Shown here: positions 1 through 63,781 of the stretch, piece by piece
Position numbering within the stretch: position 1 is the stretch's first letter
Layout: every line of letters begins with the position of its first letter
NCBI RefSeq assembly: GCF_963853765.1
Contig: NC_088857.1
Span: 19,902,001-19,966,000, forward strand
Source of the DNA: Magallana gigas
Taxonomy: Eukaryota
Reading direction: 5' to 3'
DNA length: 64,000 nt
Notes under the pieces: model-generated
The model's database searches: none
Seen by the model: only the letters and a program-made list of their open reading frames with translations
What the model was told of the DNA's origin: nothing
Position numbers and translations under genes: made by a program

Positions 1-2505
1 TTTCGAAGCATGGAAGCAGAACTTGCAGTATACTCTGTCTCTGGATTCTAACTTTGCAATATGATGCGCAAGACGTACCAGAAAATTCACGAAGAACAGC
101 CGCACAAAAAGTAGCACATCTGGAACTTATGCTTGGGCAAATTGCTAACTACTGTCCCATTACCTCCACTATGGTACTATTGTAAAGAACTCTACATCTA
201 TTGAATCTATTTGGCAAGCAATACGTACTCACTTTGGGTTCCAGTCAACTGGCGCACATTTCTTAGACTTGGATAACATCCACTTAGAACCGGGAGAACG
301 ACCAGAAGACTTATTTCAAAAACTGACCAGCTTCATTGAGAACAACCTACTCCAACGTGGAGGAGGTATAAGTCACATGGGTGCACTTCCGGAAGCAGAT
401 GAAAAGTTATCCCCCTCCCTCGAGAACCTCATCACATTAACAGGGCTCCGCCTACTGAACAAGGACTTAGCTGCCCTGGTGAAACAAAGGTATGGTCCTG
501 AGCTAAGATCCAAAACGCTAGCCAGCTTAAAACCCGAAATATCTCAAGCTCTAGACAGCCTACTTGATGAAAGTCGTATAAACAATGATGCCAAGGTCCT
601 TCGAACAGCGTTTAAAAACTAAACAAACCACCTACCACAACACAGAGGCATCAAAACTTTCGCACCTAAAACAACAAGATATGCCCATTGTGCAGACAAG
701 CTGGACGACCTCGTCATGATCACTTCCTGGGCACTTGCAAATTTTTACCACAAGAAGACAAAACATTTATGAGCCGAGCTAGACCTTGATGTTGACTTTC
801 TCGCAGGTATTCCATTTCTCTCTGCTAATGATATCAGTATCCGTCCAGCACTCCATGAAATAATGATTGGGGACTCCCATGTAATTTACTATTACACCCA
901 TGACAGACACCAACAGCACCACAATCGACGGGCTCATGCTTATGTTCAGAAGTCACCGTCCACTACAGTGTGGCCAGGATCACACCTTGAGCTAGATGTA
1001 CCGTAACACATCCCAGCGGAAGGCACTGCAGCTGTTGAACCTCGTACTGAATCCCGCTACGCACACAATATGTGGCCTAAACCTGAAATAATAGATGTAG
1101 TGGATGGAAAAACATGCATTGTGAACAATACAGAAGAACCTAAACAACTCAAGAAAAATGAACACTTCTGTCAAATTCTTCCTACTATACTTGCATCAAA
1201 AACATCACCGATGATTTACCAAAATCTGCGCTTTGTCACAACCAACAAAAACATTACAAGGGTGCAATTGCAAACACTGTCATTCCGACTCTGTTAAAAT
1301 CAATCAGGACCAAATTCTTAACCTCGATACTCAACAACAGTTCCAAAGAGCCCTTCTGACACACGACTCTCTATTCGACCCTCACTTCAGTGGTTATAAC
1401 GGTAAGGTGGGAACATTTAACATGAAGATTAACATGGGACCTACACAACCCCCTCAGAGAAGGGGTCGCCTCCCACAATATTTCAAAGACAAACTACATA
1501 TTCTGCAAGACAAGTGCAATGAATTAGAGGCCCTTGGAGTCCTGAGAAAACCAGAAGAAATAAACATTACTGTGGAATACCTAAATCCGTCCTTTCTGGT
1601 TTCTAAACCAAATGGTGGACATCGACTGGTTACTGCCTTCGAAGACGCTGGGCGCTATTCAAAACCCCAACCATTCCTAATGCCTGACTCTACCCTACGC
1701 ACCATTAGTCAGTGGAAATATCTTATAGTGACAGACTTAACAAGTGCATTCTATCAGATCCCATTGGCCAGAGAATCAATGCGTTATTGCGGCATTGTTA
1801 CCCCTTATAAAGGTGTACGTGTTTACACCCGGTGTGCAATTGGGATGCCAGGCTCAGAAACCGCCTTAGAAGAACTCGTGTGCAAGGTCTTAGGAGACCA
1901 TCTTCAGGCGGGATTTGTTTCGAAGTTAGCAGATGATTTAAACTGCGGAGGAAACACCCCAGAGGAACTTTTACAAAACTGGATCAGTGTAATGATAGCC
2001 CTCAATGATTGTGGACTTACGTTATCGGCAGGAAAAACAATCATTTGCCCACGCTCAACGACCATGTTAGGATGGATTTGGACACAGGGGCGTCTTTCTG
2101 CAAGCCTCACAAAGTCTCAGTCCTATCCACATGCAAACTTCCAGACACTGTCCATGGCTTGCGCTCATTTATTGGGGCCTACAAGATGTTATCCCGCGTC
2201 CTACCAAGCTGTGCACCTCTCGAAAGTGCCGTCAGTGGCCTTCAGTCAAGGGACAAAATCAAGTGGTCAGAAGAGCTGATTGAGAACTTTAACACAGCCC
2301 AATGACAACTTAAAGACTCCAAAGAAATCTACCTTCCAAGGAGAGTTGACCATTTGTGGATTATCACTGATGGGTCCGTCAGCAAATGGAGCGACTCTAT
2401 ACATAATGCGTGATGACAAAATCCGTCTCGCTGGATTCTTCAGTGTCAAATTACGAAAGCATCAAGTAACATGGCTCCCATGCGAAATTGAAGCATTGTG
2501 TATAT
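1..2505 (+). pseudogene. Decayed Ty3/Gypsy-type LTR retrotransposon gag-pol remnant (gag, linker, RT, start of RNase H), with frameshifts and stops
   Basis: ORF pieces 269-622 (gag-like), 1233-2279 (RT motifs [50 protein letters not shown] as degenerate YADD), 2009-2305 ([10 protein letters not shown] connection) and 2280-2505 ([24 protein letters not shown], RNase H) lie in different frames. The element begins before the window; no integrase or 3' LTR follows. Confidence 0.9.
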
Positions 2506-3591
2506 CTGGTGATTATATAGGAATCACCTTGTCCGTCCGTCTGTCTGTTCAATTCGTGTCCGGTCCATATCTTTCCTACAGAGAAACATTGGAAGTTCTC
2601 ACTTCACACAAAGATTGCTTATGACCTAAGGGTGTGTTATGACCTTGACCCAAGGTCAAGGTCACTGGCAGAAAAAGTGCAAAATTCGTGTCCGGTCCAT
2701 ATCTTTTTAATGGAAAAACATTGGAAGACCTTACTTCACACAAAGATTCCTTATGACCTAAGGGTGTGTCATGACCTTGACCAAGGTCTTTTGGTCAAGG
2801 TCACTGGAAGAAAAAGTGCAAAATTCGTGTCTGGTCCATATATTTTTAATGGAAAAACATTGAACGTTTTTACTTCACACAAAGATTCCTTATGACCTTA
2901 GGGTGTGTCATGACCTTTACCTAAGGTCATTTGGGCAAGGTCATGGTCACTGGCAGAAAAAAAAGCAAATTTCGTGTCCGGTCCATATCTTTTTAATGGA
3001 AAAACATTGGAAGTTCTTACTTCACACAAAGATTCCTTATGACCTAAGGGTGTGTCATGACCTTGACCAACGTCATTTGGGCAAGGTCAAGGTCACTGGC
3101 AGAAAGAGTGCTAAATTCGTGTCTGGTCCATATCTTTCTTATGGAGAAACCTTGGTAGTTCTTAATTCACATTAAGATTGCTTATAACCTGAGGGTGTGT
3201 CATGACCTTGACCCAAGGTCAATTGAGGAAGTTCAATGTCATTGTTTTAAAAAAATTGGGCTCAGTATACCAATAATCCAAAATGTTTATATATTAAATG
3301 GCTGCTTGACATGTGGAATTTTGTTTGATACGAGTCATGTCTGTTAACATAAGGATGCAAATGTCCTCGTGCATTAACAGACAACTTGAACTAAAATGCA
3401 ATTTAAAGAATAGATATTATTTGTGTACTCATATTAGCATTAACAGTTTCAAAAAAATAGAGCAGTTGTTATTTATAAAAAATGGACGGTGAAATAGATT
3501 CATCCAATATTTTCTATAATAGAAAAAATACGAGTTATGATTTTTTCTTAGCGGGGGGTATCAATTGTGAGCTTGCTCACAGTACCTCTAG
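2506..3591 (+). mobile_element. Non-autonomous Helentron/HINE-like element with central tandem repeat array
   Basis: 5' hairpin GGTGATT..AATCACC then GTCC/GTCT microsatellite; ~4.6 copies of a 132-146 bp unit (AATTCGTGTCCGGTCCATATC anchors at ~2551, 2683, 2822, 2968, 3114); 3' GCGGGGGGTAT, hairpin TGTGAGC-TT-GCTCACA and CTAG|TT end at 3588-3591. ORFs 2632-2895 and 2903-3175 are repeat artefacts. Confidence 0.8.
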
Positions 3592-7526: not shown

Positions 7527-10500
7527 ATGAAGCGTCTGAGGATTTTAAAACTTTCGTTGGCTCTATGTCTTTTGATAGACAATTGCATTTTTGCCGTGAA
7601 CGGGGTAAATATTTCTATTTATTTTATTTTTATTTTTTATGGATATGGGTTATTACGAATAAAAAAGGAAATTTTTTAAGAGTTACGTTGATAAAATTTA
7701 CTTTATTCGGAAAGTTTGTAAAAGATGTAAAACTTTCGAATATTTAAGAGAATTGTTTTAGATTATTTTTTCGAAAGTCTCATTTTTTGCGGTTATATAT
7801 CTTTTTCACAATTACCGAGAAATAAAGTGAGTAAAAGATATAAACATTACTTATATGTTTATCCTAGTTATTTCAATTTCGTCCTACTTAGATTTTTTAA
7901 TATTAAGAATACAAAGTATCAATATTGATTTGAAAATTGATCAAGAAAATATGTAAGTGAAAAAAAACAATTTTTTGTTTCAAAATTTCAAGTACAATGG
8001 ATATTTCGTAGAGTATTATTAATTGATAAAAACATAAATTTAAAAAAACAAATAACTCATTCATGACAAAAGCGTGAACATGTAAATGGGCATTAACGCT
8101 GTTTTTCTTGTCATACACGGAAATACACGAAATTCGTACCGCAGGGTCGCCATGTCTTACAAGCGCCCCACAGATAACGATGCTATTATTGTAATCTAAG
8201 TAGTGGCTCCTTCATTAAGTTGGCCTTTCACACGAACAATAAATATCATTAACTTTTCGTATTGAACTGAATATTAATGGAATTCTTTTGCACCGGCAGG
8301 TGACTTTTAGATCAGCACTCCGCGGTTTTGAAGGTGTATCCTGATTAATAAATTTCCATAATTAAGCAAAAAGTAATAATGAGAAATTGCAGTGGGTAAA
8401 AGAACACGATTTTTGTCTTGGCAAAAGAGCCGTTATATTAATGTATTACATGTACGTATATCTCTTACGTATATCTCATATATCGTCAAAGTCAAATTAA
8501 TTAAATCTGTCATGGTTTGTGACGTTCAGTTATAAACAGTAACTTTCGGAATGTAGCACCAGAAACTCTTTGTTTGATTGATAATTAAGTATTAAGTATT
8601 AGCTACAGTAACTCTGTATTTCAGGTTAGTTACAACTTATGATAATGATGAAAAATGATGTTTGAATAAATACTGATAACTCTTCTTAAATCATTTCTCT
8701 CTTTATATCTTGCGTGATTTATTGAAAACAAAAATAAATGAAAATTTATTTATCTTCTTCAATAAATTGGTTTCTGGAAATATTTTCTTATGCAATTAAG
8801 AATGAACAATTTTTTAATATTTAAACAAAATAAAAAATGCTTAAAAAGTAGAATAGTATTAAAGTTTTTATGAGATTCAACTCATAATGGAAAACGAGCT
8901 AGGGAGAAACGATAAAAAAAAAACCCACACATTGCAATTTTGGTGAGTTGTGTTGTTTTGTTTTTAATTTTATTTTTTGAAGGAGAGGGCTCAATTCTAG
9001 TAGTTTTATCCGGTTTAACATGTAAGGTAAATAGACCTATTAGAAAGTTTGAGAAAGAAGAATATTTGGCTATGTAAATGAAGGGGAATACACTGCCCAC
9101 AGATGATGCGCAAAAATTAATTAAACAATTCAGTCATGATGGTATTTACCATAATCTGACAAGTCACACACGGTAAAGCCATCAGATTTGACATCGATTC
9201 AATTAGCTTAAATTTTCTTTCGACATAATATCTATCAAAATAGATATTAACTGTCAGATTAAATATATATTGTCTCTTTGGGGAAAATTGCTATTGCGAT
9301 CAGCTATATGCTTGTGGTTTATGCTTGGATACTATACATACGATTTAGTTGATTTCTGGTTTTACAAGACAAGGGTTTTTTTTTTACGTAGTGGTTTCTT
9401 TAACCATAACTTTTATTACATATATTGTAAGTTTTCAATAGGTCTTTATAACAGAACAACGGTACCTATAGCCTTTGTCTCAGACACAAATCTGCAATTC
9501 AAATCAAGTCTAGTAATGAAAGTTAGTGTGTAAATTTAAAAAGAAAAAAAATCAGAATTATCTTGAACTCATGTGCTTGGAAATTTAGACACACCTTTCT
9601 TTTGCAAAACGTATGTAAATTGTTAAATGGCATATTAATCAAAATGAAAGCTTCACTGTAGACAGTAAGAAAACTGTATATGAATTCGCTGTGACATCTT
9701 CGTGCGCGCATTGCACGAAGGTTATCTATTTTTACTCATTAACAAACTTTTTTCTCGGAGATCCAGCTATAAAAATAAATCTGTAATTTGTTTTTTTATC
9801 TAATTCATTTTTAAAGGGTGTTTCATGTTATATTACATATTAGATCTACACTGACATTTTGGATTTGATTTGTTAGCTATAACGTTTTATAAGGGAAAAG
9901 ATTCTTAATATTTAAGCTTTGAATTTTGAATGTATTTCTATATTTTCTATATTTTTTTTCCTTTTAAGATAGTTTTGAAAAAATTTCCCCTTTCATTTAA
10001 TTTACTACATGTATTATCAATTAAGCCAGTTTTAATAAAAATAAACAACCTTATTCTGTGGAAAAAACAGGTCTGATTATGTCTTATACTGTAGACTCAA
10101 ATAAATATTTGATTTATTTTAAAAGGATTTTCTTAATAGTCTCTAAATTCAGGAAGAAATACGCAGACTTAACAGGAGATAAATATTAACCAAATATACG
10201 CTTTTTAGGGTCATTCCCTTTGACAAGTCCTCAATAAATCGGTACAGATATTCTCTCAAGCATTACCTACCTAATATGAAGCAGAAGGACGTAGTCACTC
10301 AAAATACTTCTTCATGTCTTTCAGCAAACGTTTAAAACTGGCGGAACAAGGAAAACCTTTTCGTTCCGGACAAATGCTAATACCGGTGTGAGTTGGAAAC
10401 GACCAACAGGCACAGGCGGCACAATCCCAAACAGAGGACAAGTGCAAACGGTACAGCTGCCAAAGACAGTACAAAAACCAACGGTGAGCTTCCCACAGAC

Positions 10501-13500
10501 CGTTCAACAGCAGCCAAATCAAAATACACAGCAAAATGTAAGCTCTTTGTTCCTAAATGTCGCTTGTGTGTGTGTGTGTGTGTGGGATTAACAATTGATT
10601 GGTTGTAAACCTTAAACATCCTGTGTAACTTGTTGCAAAGGGGATACAGTAACACTTACTATGTGTATTCATGTGCTTGGGTTGCAAAGCAATTAAGCTA
10701 ACAAACTTTGTGGTCAACTTGAAGATTTGAAGACATCCTCAAGTTTCAACATTATTTTACTATGTAGATTTCTCGTGCTTTTTAATAATTTAAACCTTAT
10801 TATATTTCAACTTATCGGTAGAATTTACAATTTCTTGAAAGTTCTGATATTTCATATTATAAAGTACAATTGTTTTCGTTATTACTACCTGTATTTAATC
10901 CAAATTAATGTTCCAATTAATAAAATACTCAAATGAACAATCTCTTCATTCACTGCATAAACAATTAACGTTGTTCAAGGTAGAACCAAATTTCTAAGTA
11001 TTTTACTTTGAGAGAAGATCTAGGCTTGGTGGTGCTATAATTGCTTTATTAATATTTTGTTTTGAAAAGGATGACAAGTTTGATTACACTTGTTTTTTTG
11101 CTTTGGCAGAATCAAGGCGGTTTTGGATTTGGAGCAGACCCACAGCCCAAACAAGATCAATGGCAACAACAGCAATATCAAAACCCACAACAACCAAGTG
11201 TTCAATATCCACCGCAAGTAAGCACAGGTCAGCAACCAAACCAAGGATGGCAGCCACCACAACAAAATCAAATTCCTCAACAGCAACCTCTACAACCTGA
11301 GCCACAAAATACTCAAACACGTCAACAACAGTCTTGGCAACAGCAAGAGCCACAAGGAAATAGTCAACAGCAATGGCAACAACCGGAGCCACAACTTCAA
11401 CAGTCTCAGACCTTTCCGGCTAGAAACCAACAAGGAAATGGTCAACAATCTTGGCAACAACCCGAGCCACAGCAACCAGAACCACAGCAACAACCGTGGC
11501 AACAATCTCAGGGTAATCAGATATCTCCACAAGTCGTACAAACCAGGCCAGAACAAAATCAACCGCAATGGCCTCAAAATAATCAGCAAACACAGAATTT
11601 CCAACCACAACCCGCACAGCAAAGTTGGAATCAAGGGCCAAGTCAAAACCCAGAACCACAGTACCCACCACAGTTCCAACCTCCAGGTACACAACAAGAA
11701 CAGCCACAAAATCAGTGGTATCCTCCAACACAACAAAACTCTGAACCTCAAGTTAACACACAGGTTCGGAGACCTTCACCACAGGGTTGGGTTCAATCTC
11801 AGCCTCAAGAACCACAGGTTCAGCCTCCGCAACAACAACAATGGCAGCCTCAACCACCACAGCAACCACAACCACCACAGCAACAACAACCGCCACAACA
11901 GCAGACACACCAATGGAATCATCACCAAAACCAACAGCCCAATCCAACGCAACAATCTCAATGGCAACCTCCTGTGGAACAACCAGCGCCAAACCAGTGG
12001 CCGCAAACACAACAGCAACAAGGTATTATAGATAGATTTACATTTGAAACTAAACATCAAGAACTTGAATATAGGGTATTTTTAAAATTAAAAGTTTAAG
12101 TTTAAGACTGTGAACCTCAACTTTATGAACTGTTAAGTTCAAACCCTTTATATAGACTCGTTTTGGCACGGTTTGAATTATGTATGTTTACAAAAGATTA
12201 AACTTTTCAATTTGGTATTCAACGATGGTTTTGTGACTATAAATCACAAAACGAAAGGAGGAGTATCAGTTTTGGAAAGAATATGACATTTTAGGTTTTT
12301 TCTTTTTAACGCAAAAGTTTACATAATAAGGTTGCCATGAAATAACGATATTTTATCAAAAATATGTCATTGCTAAATCATAAAACAAACAATACCTTGC
12401 TTGACACATTAGGACCATATCCACAACAACCATCACCACCACTCAATAACCAAGTCCAAGGTGGTCTCCCTGAAAAGTTGCAAATTGGAACAACAACTCC
12501 GCCAGGTGCTTTGTTTGCAGACCTGATTCAGAACCAAAACCCCCAACAAAACCAAGCCTACCAGCCCCCGCAACAAACTGGTTTTCAATCCCACCAGCAA
12601 CCTCATCAGCAACGGCAACAACAGCAGTCCCCACCTTATCCTGGTGTACAAGTACAACCACCAGTGCAAGTGCACTCCAATCCATTTGCGGGCAGACCAG
12701 GTGCCGTTCCTCACTCTCCCCAGGTACCCCAACCCAGTGTACCTGTGGCCCCACCTAAGCCTATCTTCGCAGGCAGACCTGAGCCAATTACCCCTGCCCC
12801 ACCGCAAGCTTCCTGGACGACACCCGCTATCGTGTATCGGCCAACAACCCCTGCCTACGTGCCACCGACCCCAGGTTATACTTTGTGTAAAGCTGTCGTT
12901 TGCGACACCTAAAAAACCAAACACACCTGCTTTTCAAACTATGCACGATATAATCAGTACTCTCCTATCCATGTCCTGTTCGTTGCTGTGAAGTAATATC
13001 TACCTGCACATGTTCAGTAGCTCTATTGTTAACACTATTTAATTGCACAAGCTGATTAACACAGCAATTTACCAATTTTCCAGCTTTCAATAATATTATT
13101 GAATTTAAAACGGCTATGTGCAGATCAAAGTGTTCCATACATGTAAAGAACATTTGCTATGGTAATAAAATATGTATTTGGTGTATTTGTTTGCATTAAT
13201 ATGTTATTGTCATATATTTCACTTTCAGTGTCTTTCTAACTGCACCTTTAATGTTTTATATAACTATATTACGAGTACTTGTCAGATATCGAAATATTCC
13301 TAGTATGTCGATCATATTATTTTAAACAAAGTTAAGAAAAAAACTTTTTCAGATTGTTTTCCAAAATTATGTATTACCAACGGAAATTTATGGTTGTATA
13401 AACAATATTTTGACTATGGCTTAACCTTTGACCTGTCATCTTTCACCAGCTCCAGTTGTGACGACCCCAGCACCTCCAGTTTCCTCCACTGTTGCAGGAG

Positions 13501-14644
13501 AGGGTCTTAATTGCTATACCACCCAGGAGTGCGAGGTCGGTTGTTGTTACGGACCCGACGGACAGCTCCTGGATATGTCCACTTACGGACCAGGTGGCCC
13601 TAAGGAATACCAAGGTATGTGCAACCTTTTAAAAGTTAAACATCAACGATAAACTTATTTGGAAATTCATTATTCATACGATTTACAGAGATATCTAGGC
13701 TTCGTAAGTTGGTTTTTGCATTTTGTTGTGGCCAGCCTTTAAAATCACTACCTGATCAGTCATATCATGTATTTTAGTAAGTTTAGCATTGTGTATATTT
13801 TATTTTTTGTTTGGTTAATTTACGATTTTCCGGACACATGCAAACATAGTAACTAAACCCCACACATTCAACATGCTTAAAAAAAATTTCCAAAGAAAAC
13901 CTCCATTATGAATATTTATTGACAAATAGTCTATGTCTATGCCGATCGATTCACTGTTTGATTTTACACTTGAATTCAGTAACCGGCAAATGTTGGATCC
14001 GTACCCCAGGTCGCAAGGATCGATGTGATGACCTGTGCCCTTGCTCTACAGGTAAGTTTAAACTCTTTCTTAATTCAGGTCTCATTGTCTATTGACACTG
14101 TTTCATTCACTTTTAATTTTGAAGAACATCATTCCTCATTTTGAATTTGCAACCATTGATGACAAGCTTCGTTTATGATTCAACCATGTTTTTTAGAATT
14201 CAATCATAATTTTCAATTTCCATATATCATGTCTTGATTTGTTTTCTGGTCTTGCTGTTTAACCCAATATCAAAAACGATTGACTAGAATTGGGATTCTT
14301 CAACAGCTTTTTATGTAAATTGTATGTATGTTCTTGAAAACAGATAACGACACCTCAGTGCAAACAACAAAAATAGTCTTTCATGTTTAGCTTAGCTGCT
14401 TTGCAATAATTACTCGTATGGTCAAAGCTTGTGCACATTTATTTTCATAGGAAATACGTGTTACAAAAGGTACCTACCTGATTATAAACTTGCCGAGACA
14501 TTGGCCCAAAACAAATCCGTAAATATCTATGACGTCAAAATCCCGCCTCCTCCGGCGGAGTGTGTTCTTAATGAAATCGTGGAGGCAGAGAGAAATGCTT
14601 TTTGGCGGTGCTATTTTGACATTCATTGTTCCGCTCAAGTCTGA
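7527..14644 (+). CDS. Secreted Gln/Pro/Trp-rich protein with C-terminal prokineticin/colipase-like Cys domain, isoform A (698 aa)
   Basis: Phase-consistent exons: 7527-7604 (signal peptide MKRLRILKLSLALCLLIDNCIFAVNG), 10325-10537, 11110-12022, 12413-12874, 13450-13614 (C-x5-C-x3-CC), 13980-14051 (C..C-x3-CPC), 14451-14644. All GT-AG; total 2097 nt, open frame. Confidence 0.85.
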
Positions 14645-15840
14645 TTTAATACTTTGGACATTACATATCTGTCTCCAGTTTGATATTAATGAGATTATTT
14701 TCGTGATAACTTTTACAGTAGCATTAGAAATGCTCAGTGATGGTTCTTATTATATCTGTAAATTATGCACATATCACTAATTGCTCAAACACTCGTACGT
14801 AAATTTTGTTGTTTAATACCAAAACTAACACAACGTGCGACTTCTCCATGCTTTTATTTTTAAAAATTGTAATATATGTTCATTGTTCAACATACGATTT
14901 GTGCTTTGTGTAGTCAGTCAAATTGTGAATTGTGATATAAATTTTATTAACACTTGTTTAATAAACGTCGATGAAGCTTTTACTACATTCATTTTGTGGG
15001 TGTGGGAATGAAATAGTCACAGTTTATATCGCCTCGCTGTTTCGGCTTCCTTTAACCACTAATGATGCACTGCCTCTGTGAAATTCATCAGCACAGGTAA
15101 GAAGTCCATTTTTGGAAAATTAGCTAGTCTTGTAAAGTGTAAAACACGCTTTATTAATTATTTCACTGTTGCTTACGAATAGGCATTTCAAAATTTTAAA
15201 TGCTTAATATTACAATTTAATCTTTTTTGGTTTTTTGCAAAACATTTTGACAAGTAGGCAAGGTACGTTTTCTCTTCCATGTTTTTACTGATTAGAAAAA
15301 TGCATACATCATTCAAATAAATTTATAATGTTATATTGTGTATCAAAGCATGCTGCTAGTTTGCCAAAAATGGTGTTTAGTTGACCCATGCAAACAATTT
15401 TACATGTTAATGATTTTGTTATACCCACTTGGTGCCTAAAATTACCAAATAGATGTTCACTCAACAAAAACTGTTAATGAGTAATGAGTACACTAATAAA
15501 TAATTTATTTTTACCAATATTTTTACACTAAAAGCAGTACAAGTACAAAGACCATGCTGTAAAAAATAAACAAAAATTTTACGTAATTTTTTTTTTAATA
15601 TAAGGAACTTTGAATGATATTGTCGCAGTACTTACTACCCACAGAATCACGTAACAAACTAAACTGCTTTCATTTGTCGTTATGTTGAATGTTATCATCT
15701 TGTTAATATTATAGTGCTGTATCTGTGAATGAAACTTTACTAACGTATTGTAATGCTAGAACGGTCTTTATAGCAAACCCCTTTGTTTACATATCTCCTA
15801 ATATAGACAGTTGACTTATACGTGCATTTCCTTTCCTTAG

Positions 15841-16025
15841 GGTATACGTGTGACCAGGATTACAACCCGATCTATCCAGGAACTCCACAGTACGTCCCAG
15901 GAGGCAAGAAAATGTTCACCAAGCCTCCACGCAAATGCAAGGATAGCAAAATCGTTAAAATTAAACAAATTGTATTCTGGGAGTGTTACAAGGACCACTT
16001 CTGCTCCGGATTCCCCAATGTCTAG
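15841..16025 (+). CDS. Alternative terminal exon B of the Q/P-rich Cys-domain gene (isoform B, 695 aa)
   Basis: Strong acceptor CATTTCCTTTCCTTAG, phase 1 matching the exon 6 donor; encodes GYTCDQDYNPIYP..PPRKC-x15-CYKDHFCSGFPNV*, a paralog of exon A; AATAAA at 16562. Confidence 0.8.
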
Positions 16026-17337
16026 GAGACAACCTTTCTCATGCAGCGTGGCTCGTGCTATTCTGAGCCAAAGGAGTCTTATCTATTTTCTCTAAGTAGT
16101 ATATGCCTTATTTTGTAATTTAAGAAAAAAAATGGCTAAATTTGCGATGGCGGTGACAATTTAATGTGGCAAACACTGAACACGTTGCTCGTAATTGGTT
16201 CACCGGGTTTTAGTGATATGACCTGACTTCTTCGTTGTGATTGCTTCTGTGGATTATGTGTTTATGAACACTTACAGAGATCATCCCCCAAAGAGAGAAT
16301 TGTGTTAATTTATCAATCGTACCATTTAAATCTGATGACAGTCGCCCAACTTCTTTTACTTTATAAATATTTGAGGCATGACTGGAAACGTGTTCAAATG
16401 TTTCTACCTAAGGTGGGGGGATTTACAGAAATTATTGTAGTTTTCATATAAAGATTTTGTTGTTGTCCTATTTATGAACGTGAAGAACTATTTATACAAC
16501 TACAGTGGTTATCATTTTCTTATGTCACATAAACATTGTCATAGATGCGGTTTGGATGATAAATAAACCGTTTTTACATCCTGATGTGTGAATTTATTTG
16601 TCTTCACTCGAATAGAAATTCTAATTAAATTGGACAACTTTTCTTCGGTGTCTTCAGAGTTTTAATGAATGCTTGTGAAACATCACGTTTTTGCGCATAA
16701 ATTTAATTGATGGTAGGTATATGTTTGCCCAGAAAAAAAACACACGCAAGGTAAAAACTTTAAAACCAAAATAAGATACGATCTTTTTTTCTTTTTTTTT
16801 GCCTATATAGATATGAAAGTATACTGAGTTATGGACCAAAAAAATAAATATTTTAAATGATAGATGAACGAAATGTTGATCACGTTCTTTAATAAGAGTT
16901 ATTTTTAGCACAAGGCGTTTACAACAGGGCTATTTTAGATACAAAACACAGGTAATATACACGATTCCATTCGTGGTAATATTTCTCAAACGATGATGAC
17001 TATAATTATGCTCAGTGACAAAATAATTCCGTGATATTTGTGACATTTATCTTGAAATGACATTTTGTATAAATCTAATGCACCAGAGACATGTATGCAT
17101 AGCATTATCAAATTTTATTAATTAAAGTTAACATAATTATTTGATTAAAATGTTACTATGTATATAGTGCTGTAAAACTGTCCCTCCAAAGTATTCGCAC
17201 ATAGTCAACCTATTTTATGTTTCTGTGTTGTTTTATTTCCGGTGAAAAACAATGTATATTCGGTCTGCTCCCGCGTATTAATAGCGTTTCATAAATATAT
17301 TTAACTATATGCATTAACTAGGGTTTTGGTTTTGCAG

Positions 17338-17525
17338 AGGAACTTGTATGTTATCGGAAATACATTCCAGTGTATCCGAGAAATAAATCCAAAAGCGGAA
17401 AGGAAGTAGAAGTCGAAATGCCAGTTCCTCCCCGGAAGTGTGTTGGACACGAGATTGCTGATGCTGAAAGAAAGGCATTCTGGGATTGTTACAGAGATTC
17501 TAATTGTTCTGGGTCTCCTCCATAG
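17338..17525 (+). CDS. Alternative terminal exon C of the Q/P-rich Cys-domain gene (isoform C, 696 aa)
   Basis: Acceptor GTTTTGGTTTTGCAG, phase 1; encodes EELVCYRKYIPVYP..PPRKC-x15-CYRDSNCSGSPP*; missed by the ORF track; AATAAA at 17912. Confidence 0.8.
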
Positions 17526-20500
17526 CTACTTAGCCTCTTGGAAATCTGTTTCACTGTAAAACATTGTCTGTCTGTTGTGGTGTTCTCATTTTTAATATGA
17601 TCGCATGTGCCATATGACATTTGATGACGAAATAATATAAAAATTACGTTATATATGCATTCAGTCTCTCTTTACTATTTCATCATTTCAGTGACGAAAT
17701 GCTATTTTTTTGTCGAACGATAACACTTACTGGGTCAAATGAAGAAAATGATGTAAACAATCGCTATACTCTGAAATATCTGAAGAAAAATTCGAATTCA
17801 GACAGATATTAGACGTTTTCGAATCAATGAACAATAAGAGGACTGTTTTCATATGTTTGACTGGCACTGTAATTAGGGGATTTTCAGTGTGCAGCCCTAA
17901 GTTTCGAAGAGAATAAAACTGCAAAAAGTACGAAGATTTGGTTTAACGATACCACTGGAACATCGGTCATTAAAAAATAGAACGGGAAATTTTGTTCGAT
18001 ATCCTTTCTGTAATTTGTTTTGAATAATGATGTGTTTATACCCCACAAAGAATGTTATATGTTTTCTACACTTCTACACATCGAACGTTGCATGCAAATT
18101 TTTTTAGTATTTCACTAAAATATATTTTAAATTTGGAACGTAAAACCCGACATCAAAATCTTAAATCTTAAGATGTTGCTTATATGAAAACCAAAGGAAA
18201 GTAACTATATGTCTTTAGGAAACTATCTATATTAATCCATACCTAAGGGATGAGTCTCTTTGTAAAAGGGTATAGGAATCAATCCAGAGTACAACGTCAA
18301 TTATGGTAGAAACCAGCCATAACACTGAAGAAACTTTGGGGGAATGATTAGTCCATGCACTAATTTACAAAAAAAAATTCATTAATAACAATCGACATCA
18401 TGGCACAGTAAAACTCACTTTTATATACTACTAGTATATATAATATATTCTAGTTATATTTTACCCACATCATATATCATATCATATATATTCAAATCAA
18501 ATTTCATCAAACAACTGTACAATTGTCACCCCCACCCCTTGATAGGCTCTTTAAAATCTAAGCTTATAGCATTATATTAACCAGGAAGTTAATTTTTGCC
18601 TTAAAGGAGGAAACAAAAAAGCAATTGTGTTCCTTAAGGACGCTGTTCTTTCGCTGTTGTCACAAATGTATCAATGTGTGAGTCAGTGTATACCGTTTTA
18701 ACCTGTACAGCAATAAATATCAACCCGTGTAGTGGAATTATCAATTCTACTGTGAAATGTTTAAAGACAACTTGGTTATACCTGTATTCACTCGTGCCTA
18801 ACAAAGCAAAATTTGATTAATCTTTGTATACCTGTATCGGTAAGAAATAGAATACAGACAGTATATTACACTTAAAGGTACCCATTGTCATTAATTTATG
18901 ATTGATGTACAGAATTTGACAATAAAGCATTGTGCAACCCTGGTAATAAATGGAATATTTTATTACAAATATTTGTATTCACCAGAATGCACTGGGAACT
19001 TGTTAGGTTTGGTGTTAATCATGGTTCACTGTTCATTTCCTGAACTATACATATCCTTCATTTATCCCTGTGTTCTATTTAAACAGGGTCACTTTTGGCC
19101 ATAATCCCATTAATATCAGAAAAATAAACCTAAGGACAAAAATGAGCTCGTTTAACTTTTATGGCTACGGTAACTGATATGGCACGAGTAACTTTCAAAT
19201 TACAAGACGCATATTATATTACATGTAACTTCATAGGATCCTCTAAACAGTATAAAAATAATTGTCGTATTTTTTTATCTTTGAGAAAAGTACAATTCAT
19301 TAAGTTTTACATTATAATAAGTAAGTTTAATATCCAGTTTATTTTCAAAATGCGAAAAATGTCAAAACATGTATTTTCCCCAGAAAAATGTATTTAATTT
19401 ACAAAAACAAAGGCCTGATCATAAAGAGACATTTCTTTTGCTAAATTCGTATGCTAAATGGGTAGGAATATTTGCAAGCAAAAAAGTGCATATTGCTAAG
19501 TATTCAACTACGGTGTACTATAAATTGGTCTCATACATTGTTTGGAATATGCCATGTACTGTAAATTTCTGTTTATTCTACATGTTACTGTTGAACATCT
19601 AAGGGTACGGGTAGGTAACTCAAACTATAATACTAGGCAGATACAGCAAGGTTCAAAATAATACAACCTTCGTATACGGACAGATTTCAGCAAGTTTTGT
19701 GTCTTTAATTCACCCATATGGTACTTCAAAAGGACAGTAACACCATGTTATATCGTAAATATTTTAAGTTATGTCAAAGGAAATTTAGAGAATATGTTAC
19801 AATAACACTCAGATAATCAATACAGTAGATGTATGGAGATTGGAGCTGGGTTATTTATGCACGAGTCATTTATTCGGTTACCATTACAGTCGTAACAGTT
19901 ATCCCTTAGTAGAACATAAAGTAGAAAAGTAAACATATTTCACACCCACGCAATCTATTCTACATGGGGCTACATTGAGTATATACATAGAGAACATAAC
20001 ATACTGTTCTTGCAGTCCTTCTCATTGAACACATTGTACACGTGATTATCATGGTCCACAGCCTGTATTTCAGATCCACAGATAACACTGTATACATCGG
20101 TACATGTACCAGTGAAAGTTTGATACTAATCCTGTTCGGTTTTATTTTTATCAATCAAAAGTTATTTCGAATTCGCTTCAATGACCCCGCTATATTCCAT
20201 GTTTATTCATCGCGTCACCAAACGCGCTCACCCAACCGTACCAAAACCAGCAGATTTAACTGCACAAAGGGAGGGACAACGGTTGGAATTTTTGAGGCAC
20301 CTGAATTAAAGCACACCCGATCTAGTTTCCTTGTTTTATGGTGAAATCTCTATTGAAAAAAATATCATAGTCTGGGCGCGTGTGACGCAAGGACCAACAG
20401 AGTGATGCCGACAAATTGACTATCATTCGCCTGTTTGTCAACAGTTATTGCGACAGACATACGGTGGGATTAAAAAACGTGGCCATACTGAGTCGATTGA

Positions 20501-48912: not shown

Positions 48913-49046
48913 NNNNNNNNNNNNNNNNNNNNNNNNNNNNNNNNNNNNNNNNNNNNNNNNNNNNNNNNNNNNNNNNNNNNNNNNNNNNNNNNNNNNNNNN
49001 NNNNNNNNNNNNNNNNNNNNNNNNNNNNNNNNNNNNNNNNNNNNNN
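48913..49046. other. Assembly gap (134 N)
   Basis: Run of N. Confidence 1.
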
Positions 49047-50570: not shown

Positions 50571-53500
50571 ATGCTTTGTAAATGTTTAAAAGAGATTCTA
50601 GTTGTAGTAGTTTTATGGAATTGTATTTTAGTTGCTTCCTTACAAATGAATAGGTTATCAATTTCGGAATCAAGTGGTAGGTACTTGAACTTCATACTCG
50701 TATCGGCTTATCCTCAGTATTTATTTTTGAAGCAAATCCTAAGATAAAATACTTCAAATTTATTTACTAGTATAAATTTTATTTTCCTTAAGGTAAGTTA
50801 TTATGCTTCATTTTATTTTTATTTAACTGGAGGTGATTGTACATGAATATAATGTAATACGGTAGCGTCATAATTACTTTATCTATAGTATGAAATGGTT
50901 TTGTAGATGTAAGCAATTGTACCAATTGTTGGTGGGGATGCGACAGTTATTCTGGAAATTGCTCAGGGCAATGTGCCCATGGCTACTTTGGACCTCGTTG
51001 TGACCAAGACTGCTTCCAGTGTCTGGACTGTGATAAAAATAGCGGCGTTTGTGTGTCCTGTCATGACCGCCATTACGGTGACAGGTGCGAGTTCAAGTGC
51101 AATGAAAACTGTATGGTCGGATGCAAGATATCCGGAGACTGTTATAAATGTAACGAAGGATTCTACGGGAAAACATGCAACTTGACGTGTCCGTCCCCAA
51201 ATTGCCGTAATGGGTGTGAAAGGTTTACAGGAAACTGCACTGATTGGGGTTGCAATGCAGGCTTTTGGGGACCACTTTGCAACAAAACATGTCCGGAAAA
51301 CTGCGGGTTTACGTCCTGTCACCAAGTAGACGGAACCTGCCAGACGTGTAAGGATGGGTACAGTGGGAAAACGTGTAGTGAGAAGTGCAACTATGAACAC
51401 TGTAGTTTGTGTCAGTTTGACGTCAGCACATGTTTTAACTGCTACCATGGCTGGTGGGGGGATCATTGCGACAAGAGGTGCACGAACCACTGCAGTCAAC
51501 CGTACTGTTCCCAACATACAGGGAAGTGTGGTAAATGTAACGCTGGGTATTATGGTCCGTACTGCGATGGAACTTGTAAATCTGTCTGCGAAACGTGTTC
51601 GGATAATAGTACTTGTGATACATGTAAAACGGGGTTTTACGGTTTTGATTGCACACAAAAATGCCTTGGTCACTGCGAGACATGTGCGCGTGATGGAAAA
51701 TGCATAGAGTGTCGCGCGGGATACTTCGGTAATGGGTGTAAGTGTGAGCTATCACAATGTAATGATATTTCAAAAGGCGTTTGTTCAAATTGTAAAAACG
51801 AAAAAACGTGGTTTCCTTCTCAAAATGGATGTTGTCCATGTAGCAATAATTGTAATTTGAACAATGAAGGTCCAATCTGTAACAGTACAGGGTGTGTTGC
51901 AGGATGCAGAGAAGGTTTTATTGGCAAGGACTGCGATGTATCTTGCAGTGAGCATTGTGTAGAGAAAAACAACAGTACATGCAGCAATAAAACGGGGGAA
52001 TGCTTGTATGGTTGCAAACAAGGCTGGCACCTTCCACATTGTGATTTCAATTGCAGTTTGAACTTCCCCCACTGTAAATCATGTAAGGAATATACAGACA
52101 ACAAGAACAGACCTTATGTGGCCTGCGAAACTTGCAAACTAGGGTACTACAAAGAGTTATACTCTGGACACTGCAAGCCTTGTGAGAATTGTGATGGTAA
52201 CATGTGCGATGGAACTATCGGATCATGTAATTGGGGTTGTGAAAAAGGATGGTACGCAAAAGGTAGACGGTATTTATGTGAGTACCCTTGTCCTGATAAG
52301 TGTTTGAACGGAGATTGTGAAGGAATTGGAGGAAAGTGTAAACTTGGTTGTCAACAAGGGTTTTATGGTTCTCATTGCCTGGAACCTTGCCCTAGTCAGT
52401 GTTTGAATAGAACCTGTGAGTTAACAAGGGGGAACTGTTTACTAGGTTGTGTTTCAGGAGCACGTGGGACATACTGCAACGAAAGCTGTAGCTCTCGGTG
52501 TGGCGTCAAAGGCTGCAGACAGGATGATGGGCATTGTAAAGGTTTGTTGAGCTGTATTCAAAAGTTCAGAATCTGTATTATTAATTTTTTTTCATTTCAT
52601 AAAGTAATTCGGGTCATAAAAAGCCTAGAGTAAAGGTGTTTGTTCGCAGACTGTATCAGGGGCCATTATGGAACGATGTGCCTGGATCGATGTAGTCCTA
52701 ACTGTTTCGGTGACAAGTGTAACCAAACAGGGTTTTGTTTGGGAGGGTGTATCAAAGGATGGACTGGACACTTTTGTGAGGGTATGTCACTTAAAGCGGA
52801 ATATGTATTTGCTTTTGATTTCATTAACACATCAATTTTTTTTTCACGATTTAGAATAAATGTTCAAATTTTCAAAGTCATATAAATAAAAAAACGTATC
52901 TGTTGTTGCAGTACATGTATTTAGAAATAAACGCATGTACGTTTGCACATATTATAGTCTGTCACAAGATATTTATACAGTACCTTTGGACGATTTTTAA
53001 TGAAAATACACATACTGTACCTTTTAAAAAAGTGCAATTTTTCAACGTTACATTGTATCATCCGGGTACTTTAATTTCTGTTGCAATGCAAAATCCCCGT
53101 AGACTTTTTATTTTTAGCCGTCTATTGAAACCTGACAAGCTAGAGTGGGCGTTTTAAATGAGAAATCGTTTGATTTTTTACATTCTATTGACTAAATATC
53201 GTTTGAACCCCGATGTATTTATAAATATTGAAATGTTTAAGAAGATACACTGCATAAATATCTTGAGACAGATTACAGAATGCCACGTTTACTAAGTGCT
53301 GAAAGGCAAGGTAAACATTAACAGTATATTGTTCTAAATATCGTCTTAAGTACGCAGAACTTGGGAGATGTATAAGTGTTTAATGTGATTTAAGCCGATA
53401 TGCTTTTTGGAGTTTGTATTATAATTCAATTTAACGAATTACACTCAGGGCATAGTTTAGTAACCTTCATGCTTGAATGATGAATATGCAAGACTACCTT

Positions 53501-62200: not shown

Positions 62201-63781
62201 TGATGATTTTTAAATTTACAGGAACAATAAATTTCTATCAAAGGTCTCCATATGATACAACAATAGTACAAATCTCCCTGAGCAACCTCCGTGGTCTGGC
62301 TGGGGGTTACCACATTCACAAGTGGCCGGTTCCCATGAAACTGACAGCGTTAGATAATGTTTGCGATGCCCAAAGTATAAGTGGACATTTTGATTTTCCA
62401 AGAGATAAGCCTCGATCCCCTCCACCGGGGAGGGGCACTGCCGACCAGTACGAAATTGGAGATCTTAGCGGGAAATACGGACTCTTAACTGGGCAGGATA
62501 GCTTCAACGGTCAATTCCGGGATGACAATTTACCCCTGTATGGGAGGTACAGTGTCATCGGGCGCTCACTTACAATTCATAAGTCTTACAAGGACGAACG
62601 GTGGGTGTGTGCAACCATTGAACCCATCAGTCGAATCACTAAAGCGGTGGCCATATTTACCGGGCCCGTCATCGGGCGAATTGTGTTTACCCAGATTCGA
62701 AACAACTACTATGCTGATACACATGTTTACGTTGAGTTAAGCTACGCTAACGGGATACAAACTCCAACAGTTGATCATAACTGGCATGTTCACGAAAACC
62801 CGGTTTGCAGTTTCTTCAATGATAGACCTTGCTCTTGTTCAGCAGCAGGTGGACACTTTAATCCTTTTCGTGTTAACGTGACTGGAAGCTACCCAAATGC
62901 ATGTCGGCCTGACAACCCCTTACGATGTGAACTCGGTGATATTTCCGGAAAACAAGAACCTGTAAATGTTCGAACTAAAGATGGAATATGGTATAGAAAT
63001 TATTTTACTGATACAAATTTACCTCTTGAAGGACCACTCGGTATAATAGGTAAATCGATCGTGATACATGATCAAAACAAAGGGAAAGGCCGTCTGGCAT
63101 GCGCAAATATTTTTGAAGTTCCGGCAAGGGCTTTGTTTGTCGAAAACTGGTACGGTTCGGAACCATCATCCGTTTCCGGCCTTTTCGAATTTGTTGGCAG
63201 TGTTCCTCAGTATGAAGATGCGATAGCATGGACTTCTCTGCGTTTGACGGGATTAAATCGTCGGGCTGGAGAGTACCACATACACACTGAACCTGTTGAT
63301 CCATCATCACCTAACCCCTGCGCTGACAGTGTAGTCGGCGGTCATTTTAACCCTTTCTTCATTAATAAAACAAACAGTCCACCCCCTGGAACTGGGACTC
63401 ATGATTTCTACGAGGTTGGAGACCTTAGCGGCAAGTATGGATCAGTTCTGCAAGGCAGAGTAAGTAGTTTGAGAATCGTTTATTATTGTACAGCATGAAT
63501 TAATACATGTAGAAGGCTTTAAAGAATGACTTATTGCTTAGATTGAACTTAGTCTAACGAACCTGCCTTCACAGGAAACAGCTCTAGCTTCCGGTCCTGA
63601 CAACTTCTTGCCTGTATCCGGACCACTTAGTATCAGTGGTAGATCGTTAGTTATCCATACTGGGAACGGATCACGCTGGGTGTGTGGTAACATCGAGGAG
63701 AACATCGAGTTGTCCGGGGGAAGAGTTGTCCGAATGATTGCAAGGTTCACCAGAGGCATGTTAATTGGTGGAGTAATATTG
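59252..63781 (+). CDS. Copper-only SOD repeat protein (CSRP-like multi-domain Cu/Zn-SOD fold), 5' portion; continues beyond the window
   Basis: In-frame exons 59252-59462, 60369-60451, 61113-61652, 62222-63459, 63575-63781. Three SOD domains have YHIH/WHVH, GHF, GDLSGK/GDISGK, G(R/K)SxxIH and (V/A)C(A/G)xI; two N-terminal domains are degenerate; a further domain begins at the window end. First coding exon unresolved. Confidence 0.88.

What the first reader, a model, noticed from the sequence alone, without database searches (positions are those of the whole stretch)
14451..17525. Three paralogous alternative last exons swap half of a disulfide-bonded prokineticin/colipase-like domain
Seen in sequence: after one shared donor (14051, phase 1) there are three homologous exons (14451-14644, 15841-16025, 17338-17525). 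Each has its own phase-1 acceptor, stop codon and downstream AATAAA (14960, 16562, 17912), and I found no duplicate of the upstream exons between them. All keep the scaffold C-x3-Y-x-P-x-Y...PP-x2-C-x15-C-x5-CS with FW-x-CY, but the first loop is hypervariable (33, 28, 29 aa) and the x15 segment changes charge (basic KDSKIVKIKQ in B, E/D-containing in A and C). Established: in prokineticin/Bv8-type folds C9 and C10 pair with C6 and C8. Inference: the variable exon would be disulfide-stitched to the constant exon, giving one gene three interchangeable binding faces on a shared polymer-like stalk, plus one extra Cys pair. I know of no description of this arrangement.
Basis: partly seen in the sequence, partly recalled or inferred. 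Interest (0 to 1): 0.87.

Follow-up and report, generated by a model that had tools for sequence, protein, structure and literature searches.

The report
Three alternative end-exons, one seen used
An oyster gene for a secreted glutamine/proline-rich protein carries three related, evolutionarily conserved final exons that each supply the last third of a cysteine-rich domain, but in the five RNA data sets examined only the middle one is spliced in.

Summary
One + strand gene has a signal peptide, a 530-aa stalk (30% Q, 20% P) and a 12-Cys domain. It ends in three homologous exons, A (14451-14644), B (15841-16025) and C (17338-17525). Each has a phase-1 acceptor, a stop codon and an AATAAA. These are the only copies in the 564-Mb genome, and the upstream Cys exons are single-copy.

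RNA evidence supports B only. Four runs from four studies, plus one spliced public contig, all join donor 14051 to 15841. A and C sit at intron-level depth.

A and C are not decaying:
- A against a distant oyster gives dN/dS 0.16 at dS about 1.
- C is 97.9% identical in a sister species, against about 89% in the flanks (p = 9e-6).

A is the ancestral type, the one in the annotated scallop and pearl-oyster proteins. The pearl oyster also has a second intact, unannotated terminal exon.

Membership of the colipase/Dickkopf/Draxin/prokineticin fold is suggested by Cys spacing and by consistently weak structural and sequence hits. It is not established.

Tandem alternative terminal exons (Drosophila pipe, PGRP-LC) and half-domain swaps (FGFR IIIb/IIIc) are known kinds. 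This is a plausible new variant, with use of A and C still unproven.

The parts
7527..7604 (+). Exon 1: start codon and signal peptide (MKRLRILKLSLALCLL...)
   Evidence: Sequence. Splicing it to the following exons gives an open frame with no stop.
10325..10537 (+). Exon 2: start of the low-complexity stalk
   Evidence: AG/GT boundaries are the only combination that gives an open frame. This junction was not covered by the reads I laid.
11110..12022 (+). Exon 3: Q/P/W-rich stalk
   Evidence: Sequence. The joint 12022>12413 is seen in all four runs.
12413..12874 (+). Exon 4: P/Q-rich stalk
   Evidence: Joints 12022>12413 and 12874>13450. It is present in spliced contig L019.
13450..13614 (+). 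Exon 5: constant exon carrying Cys 1-4 (C-x5-C-x3-CC)
   Evidence: Translation and RNA joints. It is single-copy in the genome.
13980..14051 (+). Exon 6: constant exon carrying Cys 5-8 (C-x10-C-x3-C-x-C). It ends in the shared phase-1 donor.
   Evidence: Translation. Joints 13614>13980 and 14051>15841.
14451..14980 (+). Terminal exon A: CDS 14451-14644, AATAAA at 14960. It is acidic and of the ancestral type. No spliced read was found.
   Evidence: dN/dS is 0.16 against the ortholog in L009, with acceptor, stop and AATAAA conserved. It is closest to the scallop and Pinctada terminal exons. Depth equals that of the flanking intron in 4 runs.
15841..16584 (+). Terminal exon B: CDS 15841-16025, AATAAA at 16562. 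It is basic (pI 9.1) and is the only one shown to be spliced.
   Evidence: The joint 14051>15841 appears in X2, X8, X1 and X20 and in L019. A contig ends at 16584, while longer 3' ends reach about 17102 and 17318 in X1 and X8. The CDS is 96.8% identical in the sister species, against about 89% in the flanks.
17338..17930 (+). Terminal exon C: CDS 17338-17525, AATAAA at 17912. No spliced read was found.
   Evidence: The CDS is 97.9% identical and the 40 nt before the acceptor 95% identical in the sister species. Flanks are 82-90% identical with indels (Fisher p = 9e-6). Depth is 0-10 in the four runs.

Best explanation
This is one oyster gene, 695-698 codons long depending on the end chosen. 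It encodes a secreted protein with a signal peptide, a stalk of about 530 aa (30% Q, 20% P) and a C-terminal 12-Cys domain.

The first eight cysteines lie in two constant exons. The last four lie in a terminal exon that exists in three tandem paralogous copies, A, B and C. All three would be reached from the same phase-1 donor at 14051.

Shown:
- The anatomy as described.
- Splicing of 14051 to B, and B's poly(A) site.
- Purifying selection on all three exons.
- A is the ancestral exon type.
- A second intact terminal exon in the pearl oyster.

Inferred:
- A and C are true alternative last exons. They would be chosen in tissues, stages or conditions not among the five RNA data sets examined. 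The choice would arise from competition between splicing to a distal acceptor and cleavage/polyadenylation at a proximal exon.
- The switch replaces the last third of a colipase/Dickkopf/Draxin-like domain. That third comprises a 28-33-residue variable loop, a charge-variable x15 segment predicted to be helical, and the last four Cys. The result would be different binding surfaces (acidic A, basic B, near-neutral C) on an otherwise identical protein.
For: Anatomy and homology:
- Only three copies of the terminal exon and one copy of the constant exon exist in the 564-Mb genome.

RNA:
- Joints 12022>12413, 12874>13450, 13614>13980 and 14051>15841 appear in four runs of four studies. X20 is stranded, and its read orientation is consistent with transcription of the + strand.
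- The independent spliced contig L019 has the same structure.
- In X1 and X8, contigs run up to about 730 nt past B's AATAAA (to about 17102 and 17318). They stop short of C.

Selection:
- A against the L009 ortholog gives dS 1.03, dN 0.167 and omega 0.16. Only the exon is alignable. Acceptor, stop and AATAAA are retained.
- C has 4/188 differences and B 6/185, against 11.4% in the flanks of the sister species (p = 9e-6 and 1.6e-4).

Deep conservation:
- The annotated proteins of Pinctada, Argopecten, Pecten and Mizuhopecten end in an A-like exon joined to the same constant exons.
- Pinctada locus L006 has a second intact exon 5 kb downstream, with a phase-1 acceptor, a polypyrimidine tract and a stop.

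Fold:
- The Draxin alignment C-x10-C-x3-C-x-C-x5-CY crosses the constant/variable junction.
- Colipase, Dkk, Draxin, MIT1 and Bv8 dominate the weak structural hits.
Against: No read or contig joins 14051 to 14451 or to 17338 in any data set examined.

Depth over A is 10.4 against 458 for B in X2, 41.9 against 997 in X1, 0 against 504 in X8, and 1.65 against 6-66 in X20. These are the values of the surrounding intron. C has depth 0-10.

Only four runs could be laid and their tissues are unknown. They were also chosen for high overall coverage of the locus.

Contigs do not show rare variants. X20 has only 9 junction reads, so a minor isoform below about 25% would be missed there.

The fold assignment rests on non-significant scores: Foldseek best E 0.17, VIA Z at most 4.4, Draxin E 0.025-0.16, no Pfam hit, atlas score 0.77.

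The tree does not resolve whether the Pinctada second exon is orthologous to B or C, or arose independently (55-70% support).
Confidence: 0.6

Rival explanations
1. Only B is ever used in this oyster. A and C are former terminal exons that are now unspliced, either silenced recently or kept for a reason other than coding.
For: Every junction seen in five RNA data sets goes to B. A and C are at intron depth. No indexed poly(A)-labelled run holding the A region was listed.
Against: A has omega 0.16 over dS of about 1, with acceptor, stop and AATAAA conserved in a distant oyster. C, and the 40 nt before its acceptor, are conserved well above the flanks in a sister species. All 12 Cys positions and the FW-x-CY motif are intact. 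A is the exon type used in the annotated scallop and pearl-oyster proteins. Exons silenced long ago should have accumulated stops or indels.
Confidence: 0.2
2. A and/or C are coding exons of other transcripts, for example from an internal promoter in the intron or by skipping the Cys exons. They would then not be partners of the constant half-domain.
For: The donors of exons 3, 4, 5 and 6 are all phase 1 (by arithmetic on exon lengths). Other in-frame joins are therefore formally possible.
Against: No ATG or signal peptide lies upstream of A or C in frame; the frame closes with a stop a few codons before C's acceptor. No joints other than the canonical ones were seen. In four other bivalves the homologous exon is joined to the same two Cys exons. 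The Draxin-like Cys pattern runs across that junction.
Confidence: 0.05
3. The Cys domain is not a colipase/Dkk/prokineticin-type fold but an unrelated or new disulfide-rich fold. The predicted cross-exon disulfides (C6-C9, C8-C10) would then be wrong.
For: There is no Pfam hit for any piece or for the whole domain. No Foldseek hit reaches E <= 0.001 and TM scores are below 0.5. VIA Z is at most 4.4. The AF2 model of the B form is unusable at pLDDT 42. The domain has two extra Cys and a 28-33-residue insert that is absent from the known members.
Against: Four weak but concordant lines point to the same superfamily. First, the Cys spacing is C-x5-C-x3-CC...C-x10-C-x3-C-x-C-x5-C. Second, Draxin is the only Cys-rich hit in two sequence searches. 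Third, 10 of the top 30 Foldseek rows are colipase-fold proteins. Fourth, the top three language-model neighbours are colipase, Dickkopf and prokineticin clusters.
Confidence: 0.25

Closest known systems
Tandemly duplicated, mutually exclusive terminal exons (Drosophila pipe and PGRP-LC)
   Same: Homologous 3' exons or exon sets are arranged in tandem behind a common upstream part. Each supplies an alternative C-terminal protein module and its own 3' end. In PGRP-LC the alternatives change ligand specificity (PMC9013439; PGRP-LC function from my own knowledge).
   Different: In those genes each alternative encodes a whole domain, and every isoform is documented in RNA. Here each alternative encodes only the last third of one disulfide-rich domain, and only one of the three junctions has been seen.
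FGFR1-3 IIIb/IIIc exons and Dscam exon 4/6 clusters
   Same: Tandem paralogous exons replace half of a disulfide-bonded domain. The other half is constant, so the domain's disulfide spans constant and variable parts and binding specificity changes (my own knowledge; not tested here).
   Different: Those are internal mutually exclusive exons of Ig domains. Here the exons are terminal, each with its own stop and poly(A) signal, and the domain is a small colipase-like Cys-rich fold.
Colipase-fold superfamily: colipase, Dickkopf CRD2, Draxin C-terminal domain, prokineticin/Bv8/MIT1, astakine
   Same: The Cys framework C-x5-C-x3/4-CC ... C-x-C-x5-C is shared. These are the best, though weak, structural and sequence neighbours. 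Like Draxin, the domain sits at the C-terminus of a secreted, largely disordered protein.
   Different: No Pfam model matches. There is no AVIT N-terminus. A 28-33-residue insert lies between C9 and C10. An extra C-terminal helix carries two further Cys. The domain follows a Q/P stalk of about 530 aa.

Membership tests
Tandemly duplicated alternative terminal exons | Two or more homologous exons in tandem, in the same orientation, within one gene | tested here: met
   A, B and C are homologous with E 3e-14 to 2e-5. They are the only three copies in the genome.
Tandemly duplicated alternative terminal exons | Each copy has its own 3' splice site in the same phase, its own stop codon and its own poly(A) signal | tested here: met
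   Sequence. B's site is confirmed by a contig end at 16584 and by L019. The sites of A and C are known from sequence only.
Tandemly duplicated alternative terminal exons | A single shared upstream donor, with no duplicated upstream exons | tested here: met
   The constant Cys exons are single-copy in the window and in the genome.
Tandemly duplicated alternative terminal exons | Each alternative junction is present in RNA | tested here: not met
   14051>15841 is seen in 4 laid runs plus L019. No 14051>14451 or 14051>17338 joint was found, and A and C are at intron depth. Only five data sets were examined, and their tissues are unknown.
Tandemly duplicated alternative terminal exons | Each copy is maintained by purifying selection | tested here: met
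   A has omega 0.16 at dS 1.03. C has 4/188 and B 6/185 differences, against 11.4% in the flanks.
Colipase fold (colipase / Dkk CRD2 / Draxin / prokineticin) | Ten-Cys framework with CC doublet and C-x-C, including C8-x5-C9 | tested here: met
   C-x5-C-x3-CC-x26-C-x10-C-x3-C-x-C-x5-C is invariant in five bivalve sequences. The same spacing aligns to Draxin. C9-C10 is 28-33 residues, far longer than I recall for prokineticin.
Colipase fold (colipase / Dkk CRD2 / Draxin / prokineticin) | A match to a curated family model (PF06607, PF01114/PF02740, PF21481/PF21479, PF15550) above its cut-off | tested here: not met
   There are no Pfam hits for the pieces or the whole domain. Draxin PF15550 gives E 0.025 at 14.9 bits, against a cut-off of 27.
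Colipase fold (colipase / Dkk CRD2 / Draxin / prokineticin) | Structural similarity of a confident model | tested here: inconclusive
   The Pinctada A-like model has pLDDT 69.5 and pTM 0.62. The best Foldseek E is 0.17, but colipase, Dkk1, Draxin, MIT1, Bv8 and U33-theraphotoxin dominate the list. VIA gives Draxin Z 3.4 with 64/66 residues aligned, and colipase Z 2.8. Atlas TM scores are below 0.4 for the same families. The B-form model is unusable.
Colipase fold (colipase / Dkk CRD2 / Draxin / prokineticin) | Disulfide connectivity C1-C4, C2-C5, C3-C7, C6-C9, C8-C10 | not testable with these tools
   Model coordinates are not returned. The connectivity is recalled from MIT1 and colipase structures (my own knowledge).
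Prokineticin/AVIT family proper | An AVIT-type N-terminus directly after the signal peptide, on a small protein of about 80 aa | tested here: not met
   The domain occupies roughly residues 575-695 of a 695-aa protein, behind a Q/P stalk of about 530 aa. It is preceded by ...VAGEGLNC.

The most novel reading that the evidence does not exclude
A, B and C are all used, in different tissues, stages or challenges. They would form a three-way switch of the C-terminal third of a Dickkopf/Draxin-like domain. The switch would have arisen before true oysters and pearl oysters diverged. The derived basic exon B would have become the default form, and the ancestral acidic exon A a specialised one. This would be the first case of alternative terminal exons re-tooling a colipase-fold binding surface across inter-exon disulfides.
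Probability: 0.45. Interest if true: 0.65.

Novelty: new variant of a known kind. Interest (0 to 1): 0.45.

Why it matters
If A and C are used, the locus is a compact natural example of diversifying a small disulfide-rich binding domain by swapping its last third. Selection evidence is already in hand, and comparison species are available (two exons in the pearl oyster, one in scallops). It would also show that the gene has two further protein-coding ends that no RNA set laid here detects. If they are never used, the strong conservation of two unspliced coding exons would itself need explaining. Either way the result is specific to one bivalve gene family of unknown function, so its reach is moderate.

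Tried and rejected
- AF2 of the B-form domain (P0002:135-257, 5-sequence alignment) gave pLDDT 42. It was not used for any search.
- Pfam scans of each exon peptide and of the whole domain gave nothing above threshold.
- The search for homologous proteins was run three times. It found no A- or C-spliced ORFs and no further Pinctada ORFs. This is uninformative: records of the window's own species appear to be left out, and the length window excludes the 695-aa protein.
- The second look-up of sequencing runs used the intron containing A with a PolyA filter. The aim was to spot runs holding only the exon share of words. No indexed holder was listed.
- A metagenome-contig scan for the 3' end of exon 6 gave 0 matches.
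- I searched for competing RNA structures (docking/selector-like inverted repeats) between the donor and the three acceptors. Only AT-rich pairs at 70-89% complementarity turned up, with none placed convincingly.
- The tree of terminal exons is too weakly supported (55-70%) to decide between one ancient duplication and independent duplications in Pinctada and oysters.
- I rejected the idea that B and C belong to separate downstream genes. B is directly joined to exon 6 in RNA, and the upstream exons are not duplicated.
- I rejected read-through of the stop in P0001 and P0004 (Q in place of the stop). The sister-species DNA has TAG there, so this is an artefact of ORF calling.
Full report
**What is there**

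The window is from an oyster. The runs that hold it at 99% identity or more are labelled with one organism or as 'oyster metagenome'. The genome is 564 Mb in 29 contigs, and the window is G000:C5:19902001-19966000.

One gene lies on the + strand. Its exons are as follows:
- Exon 1, 7527-7604: ATG and signal peptide.
- Exon 2, 10325-10537.
- Exon 3, 11110-12022.
- Exon 4, 12413-12874.
- Exon 5, 13450-13614.
- Exon 6, 13980-14051.

Spliced together they give an open frame of 1903 nt with no stop, ending in phase 1. After the signal peptide comes about 530 aa of low-complexity stalk, 30% Q and 20% P. Exon 5 then carries C-x5-C-x3-CC, and exon 6 carries C-x10-C-x3-C-x-C.

**The observation**

Three further exons follow the donor at 14051: A (14451-14644), B (15841-16025) and C (17338-17525).
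- Each begins after an AG preceded by a pyrimidine-rich tract.
- Each is open in phase 1 and ends in a stop.
- Each is followed by AATAAA, at 14960, 16562 and 17912.

The peptides share 15 invariant columns, including four Cys, Y-x-P-x-Y, PP-x2-C and FW-x-CY-x-D-x2-CS.

The pairwise tblastn E-values are 3e-14 (A-C), 2e-10 (B-C) and 2e-5 (A-B).

A profile of the three exons finds only these three places in the whole genome. The exon-5 peptide finds only itself.

The full products would be 698, 695 and 696 aa. The terminal peptides differ in charge, with pI 5.7, 9.1 and 7.9.

**RNA evidence**

I laid three sets of Logan contigs and one set of raw poly(A) reads on 12000-17950. The four runs come from four studies.

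All four runs show the same joints:
- 12022>12413.
- 13614>13980.
- 14051>15841.
- 12874>13450, in three of the four.

No joint to 14451 or 17338 was reported.

Depth over A equals that of the surrounding intron, and one low-depth contig spans both:

| Run | Depth over A | Depth over B |
|---|---|---|
| X2 | 10.4 | 458 |
| X1 | 41.9 | 997 |
| X8 | 0 | 504 |
| X20 | 1.65 | 6-66 |

C is at depth 0-10.

X20 is stranded, and all its first mates lie on the - strand. This fits transcription of the + strand.

A fifth, independent data set is contig L019 from another run. It is a spliced transcript with the structure exon 4 - exon 5 - exon 6 - B.

B's poly(A) site is confirmed by a contig ending at 16584. 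In X1 and X8, abundant contigs run on to about 17102 and 17318. Cleavage at 16562 is therefore not obligatory.

The limits of this evidence:
- Their tissues are unknown.
- Contigs hide rare variants.
- X20 has only nine junction reads.

**Are A and C decaying? No**

*Exon A.* Contig L009, from a more distant oyster, aligns to the window only over exon A, at 77.6% nt identity; the flanks are unalignable. The codon comparison gives dS 1.03, dN 0.167 and omega 0.16. The acceptor (TTTTCCTCAG|G), the stop and a downstream AATAAA are retained.

*Exons B and C.* Genomic contigs L010-L018, from a sister species, are colinear with 14884-18527. The identities are:

| Region | Identity |
|---|---|
| C coding part | 97.9% |
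| 40 nt before C's acceptor | 95% |
| B coding part | 96.8% |
| Introns, UTRs and spacer | 82-90%, with many indels |

Fisher tests against pooled flanks give p = 9e-6 for C and 1.6e-4 for B. C is thus conserved at least as well as the exon that is demonstrably expressed.

**Which exon is ancestral**

A profile search of 1.8 billion protein representatives found only a handful of relatives, all bivalve:
- Pinctada imbricata KAK3088618.
- Argopecten irradians XP_069106547.
- Pecten maximus and Mizuhopecten yessoensis proteins.
- Several ORFs from unassembled reads.

All four annotated proteins have the same architecture: signal peptide or low-complexity stalk, the two constant Cys exons, and a terminal exon. 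All 12 Cys are invariant.

Their terminal exon is A-like (CYRRY-x-P-x-YK ... AER-x-AFW-x-CYFD-x2-CSGPL). In the tree, oyster A groups with these, while B and C sit on long branches.

The scallop loci, with 10 kb of downstream flank, hold one terminal exon. The Pinctada locus holds two. The annotated one is at L006:15017-15214. The second, unannotated one is at 19999-20171. It has a phase-1 acceptor, a pyrimidine tract, all four Cys and a stop.

Whether this second exon is orthologous to B or C is unresolved, with support of 55-70%.

**The fold**

Pfam finds nothing for the pieces or for the whole domain. The only weak row is Draxin, at E 0.025 and below its cut-off.

Sequence searches of the PDB also give Draxin, at E 0.05 and 0.16. 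The alignment C-x10-C-x3-C-x-C-x5-CY runs from exon 6 into the terminal exon.

AF2 failed on the B form (pLDDT 42). It gave a moderate model of the Pinctada A-like domain, with pLDDT 69.5 and pTM 0.62. In that model:
- The constant part scores 79-89.
- The C9-C10 loop is disordered.
- The x15 segment forms a helix.

No structural match is significant. Even so, the lists are dominated by one superfamily:
- Foldseek lists colipase, Dkk1 CRD2, Draxin, MIT1, Bv8, Dkk2 and a prokineticin-like spider toxin.
- VIA gives Draxin Z 3.4 (64 of 66 residues aligned), colipase Z 2.8 and Dkk1 Z 2.7.
- The ESM Atlas gives colipase, Dickkopf and prokineticin clusters as the first three feature neighbours (0.77), and the same families by shape at TM below 0.4.

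I read this as probable membership of the colipase-fold superfamily, at about 75%. It is an unusual member, with a 28-33-residue insert between C9 and C10 and an extra helix carrying two more Cys.

It is not a prokineticin proper, because it has no AVIT N-terminus and sits behind a 530-aa stalk.

The claim that C9 and C10 pair with C6 and C8 follows from that fold as I recall it. It could not be tested, because model coordinates are not returned.

**Most likely mechanism**

The gene makes a secreted stalk-plus-domain protein. In the samples seen, its domain is completed by exon B, the basic and most derived copy.

A and C are coding exons under selection that can only be read in frame from a phase-1 donor. 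In every relative, the homologous exon follows exon 6. So the most economical reading is that they are alternative last exons used in contexts not sampled.

Choice would work as for other alternative last exons, a point I infer from general knowledge:
- Using A requires splicing to the first acceptor and cleavage near 14980.
- Using B or C requires skipping the earlier acceptor and poly(A) site.
- The contigs that run past B's AATAAA show that its site, at least, can be bypassed.

I found no convincing competing RNA structures.

I put 0.6 on this reading, 0.2 on 'only B is used now', and 0.05 on other transcripts using A or C.

**Comparison and novelty**

Tandem exon duplication with mutually exclusive use is a known class. 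Cases with duplicated terminal exons are described for Drosophila pip and PGRP-LC (PMC9013439).

Replacing half of a disulfide-bonded domain by alternative exons is known from FGFR IIIb/IIIc and Dscam (my own knowledge).

What would be new is the combination: terminal exons that swap the last third of a colipase-type Cys-rich domain, conserved among oysters and perhaps back to pearl oysters. A further twist is that the ancestral exon is silent where the gene is highly expressed.

That makes this a new variant of a known kind, conditional on showing that A and C are used.

My reconstruction agrees, and gives 695-698 aa rather than about 550.

**Verdict**

Interest is moderate (0.45). The decisive test is simple and was blocked only by the read-laying cap: junction counts for 14051>14451 and 14051>17338 across many tissues and stages.

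Noticed in passing
window 16585-17318: In runs X1 and X8, abundant contigs continue from exon B past its AATAAA (16562) to about 17102 and about 17318. In X2 the contig stops at 16584. B therefore has alternative long 3' UTRs that end just short of the acceptor of exon C.
   Followed up: partly
window 15882, 14553, 16124, 16297: Variants appear in the RNA runs. 15882 A>T (Thr>Ser in exon B) is fixed in X2. 14553 C>T (Pro>Leu in the PPPP motif of exon A) is in the X2 contig. An A-run length polymorphism lies at 16124, and a 5-nt deletion allele at 16297 in B's 3' UTR. Contig L019 carries the K>E, K>N and I>T changes in exon B that also separate the sister species.
   Followed up: partly
P0006, P0007 (protein database entries matching exons A and C): Two database ORFs are exon A and exon C with systematic P>L/F, A>V, S>F and H>Y changes. 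This is the signature of C>T converted (bisulfite) reads assembled and translated. They are artefacts, not variants.
   Followed up: no
P0001, P0004 and L010-L018: Database ORFs of exons B and C read Q at the stop and continue into the 3' UTR. The underlying sister-species DNA has TAG there, so the ORFs were called with a code that reads TAG as Gln.
   Followed up: yes
L006:19999-20171 (Pinctada imbricata VSWD01000011.1): An unannotated, intact second terminal exon lies 5 kb downstream of the annotated last exon of KAK3088618. It has a phase-1 acceptor and a stop.
   Followed up: partly
window 1233-2279 and 2653-3228: An ORF has a reverse-transcriptase domain (RVT_1, E 1e-9), so it is a retroelement fragment. 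Next to it is a 139-bp tandem repeat of 4 copies.
   Followed up: no
window 62200-63498: A 432-aa open frame has two stretches matching Cu/Zn superoxide dismutase (Sod_Cu, E 2e-27).
   Followed up: no
window 51053-52633: A 526-aa open frame in a region of strong positive GC skew has no Pfam match.
   Followed up: no
window 10563-10585 and 48913-49046: A (GT)n microsatellite lies in intron 2 of the gene. A run of 134 N lies at 48913-49046 and was left untouched.
   Followed up: no
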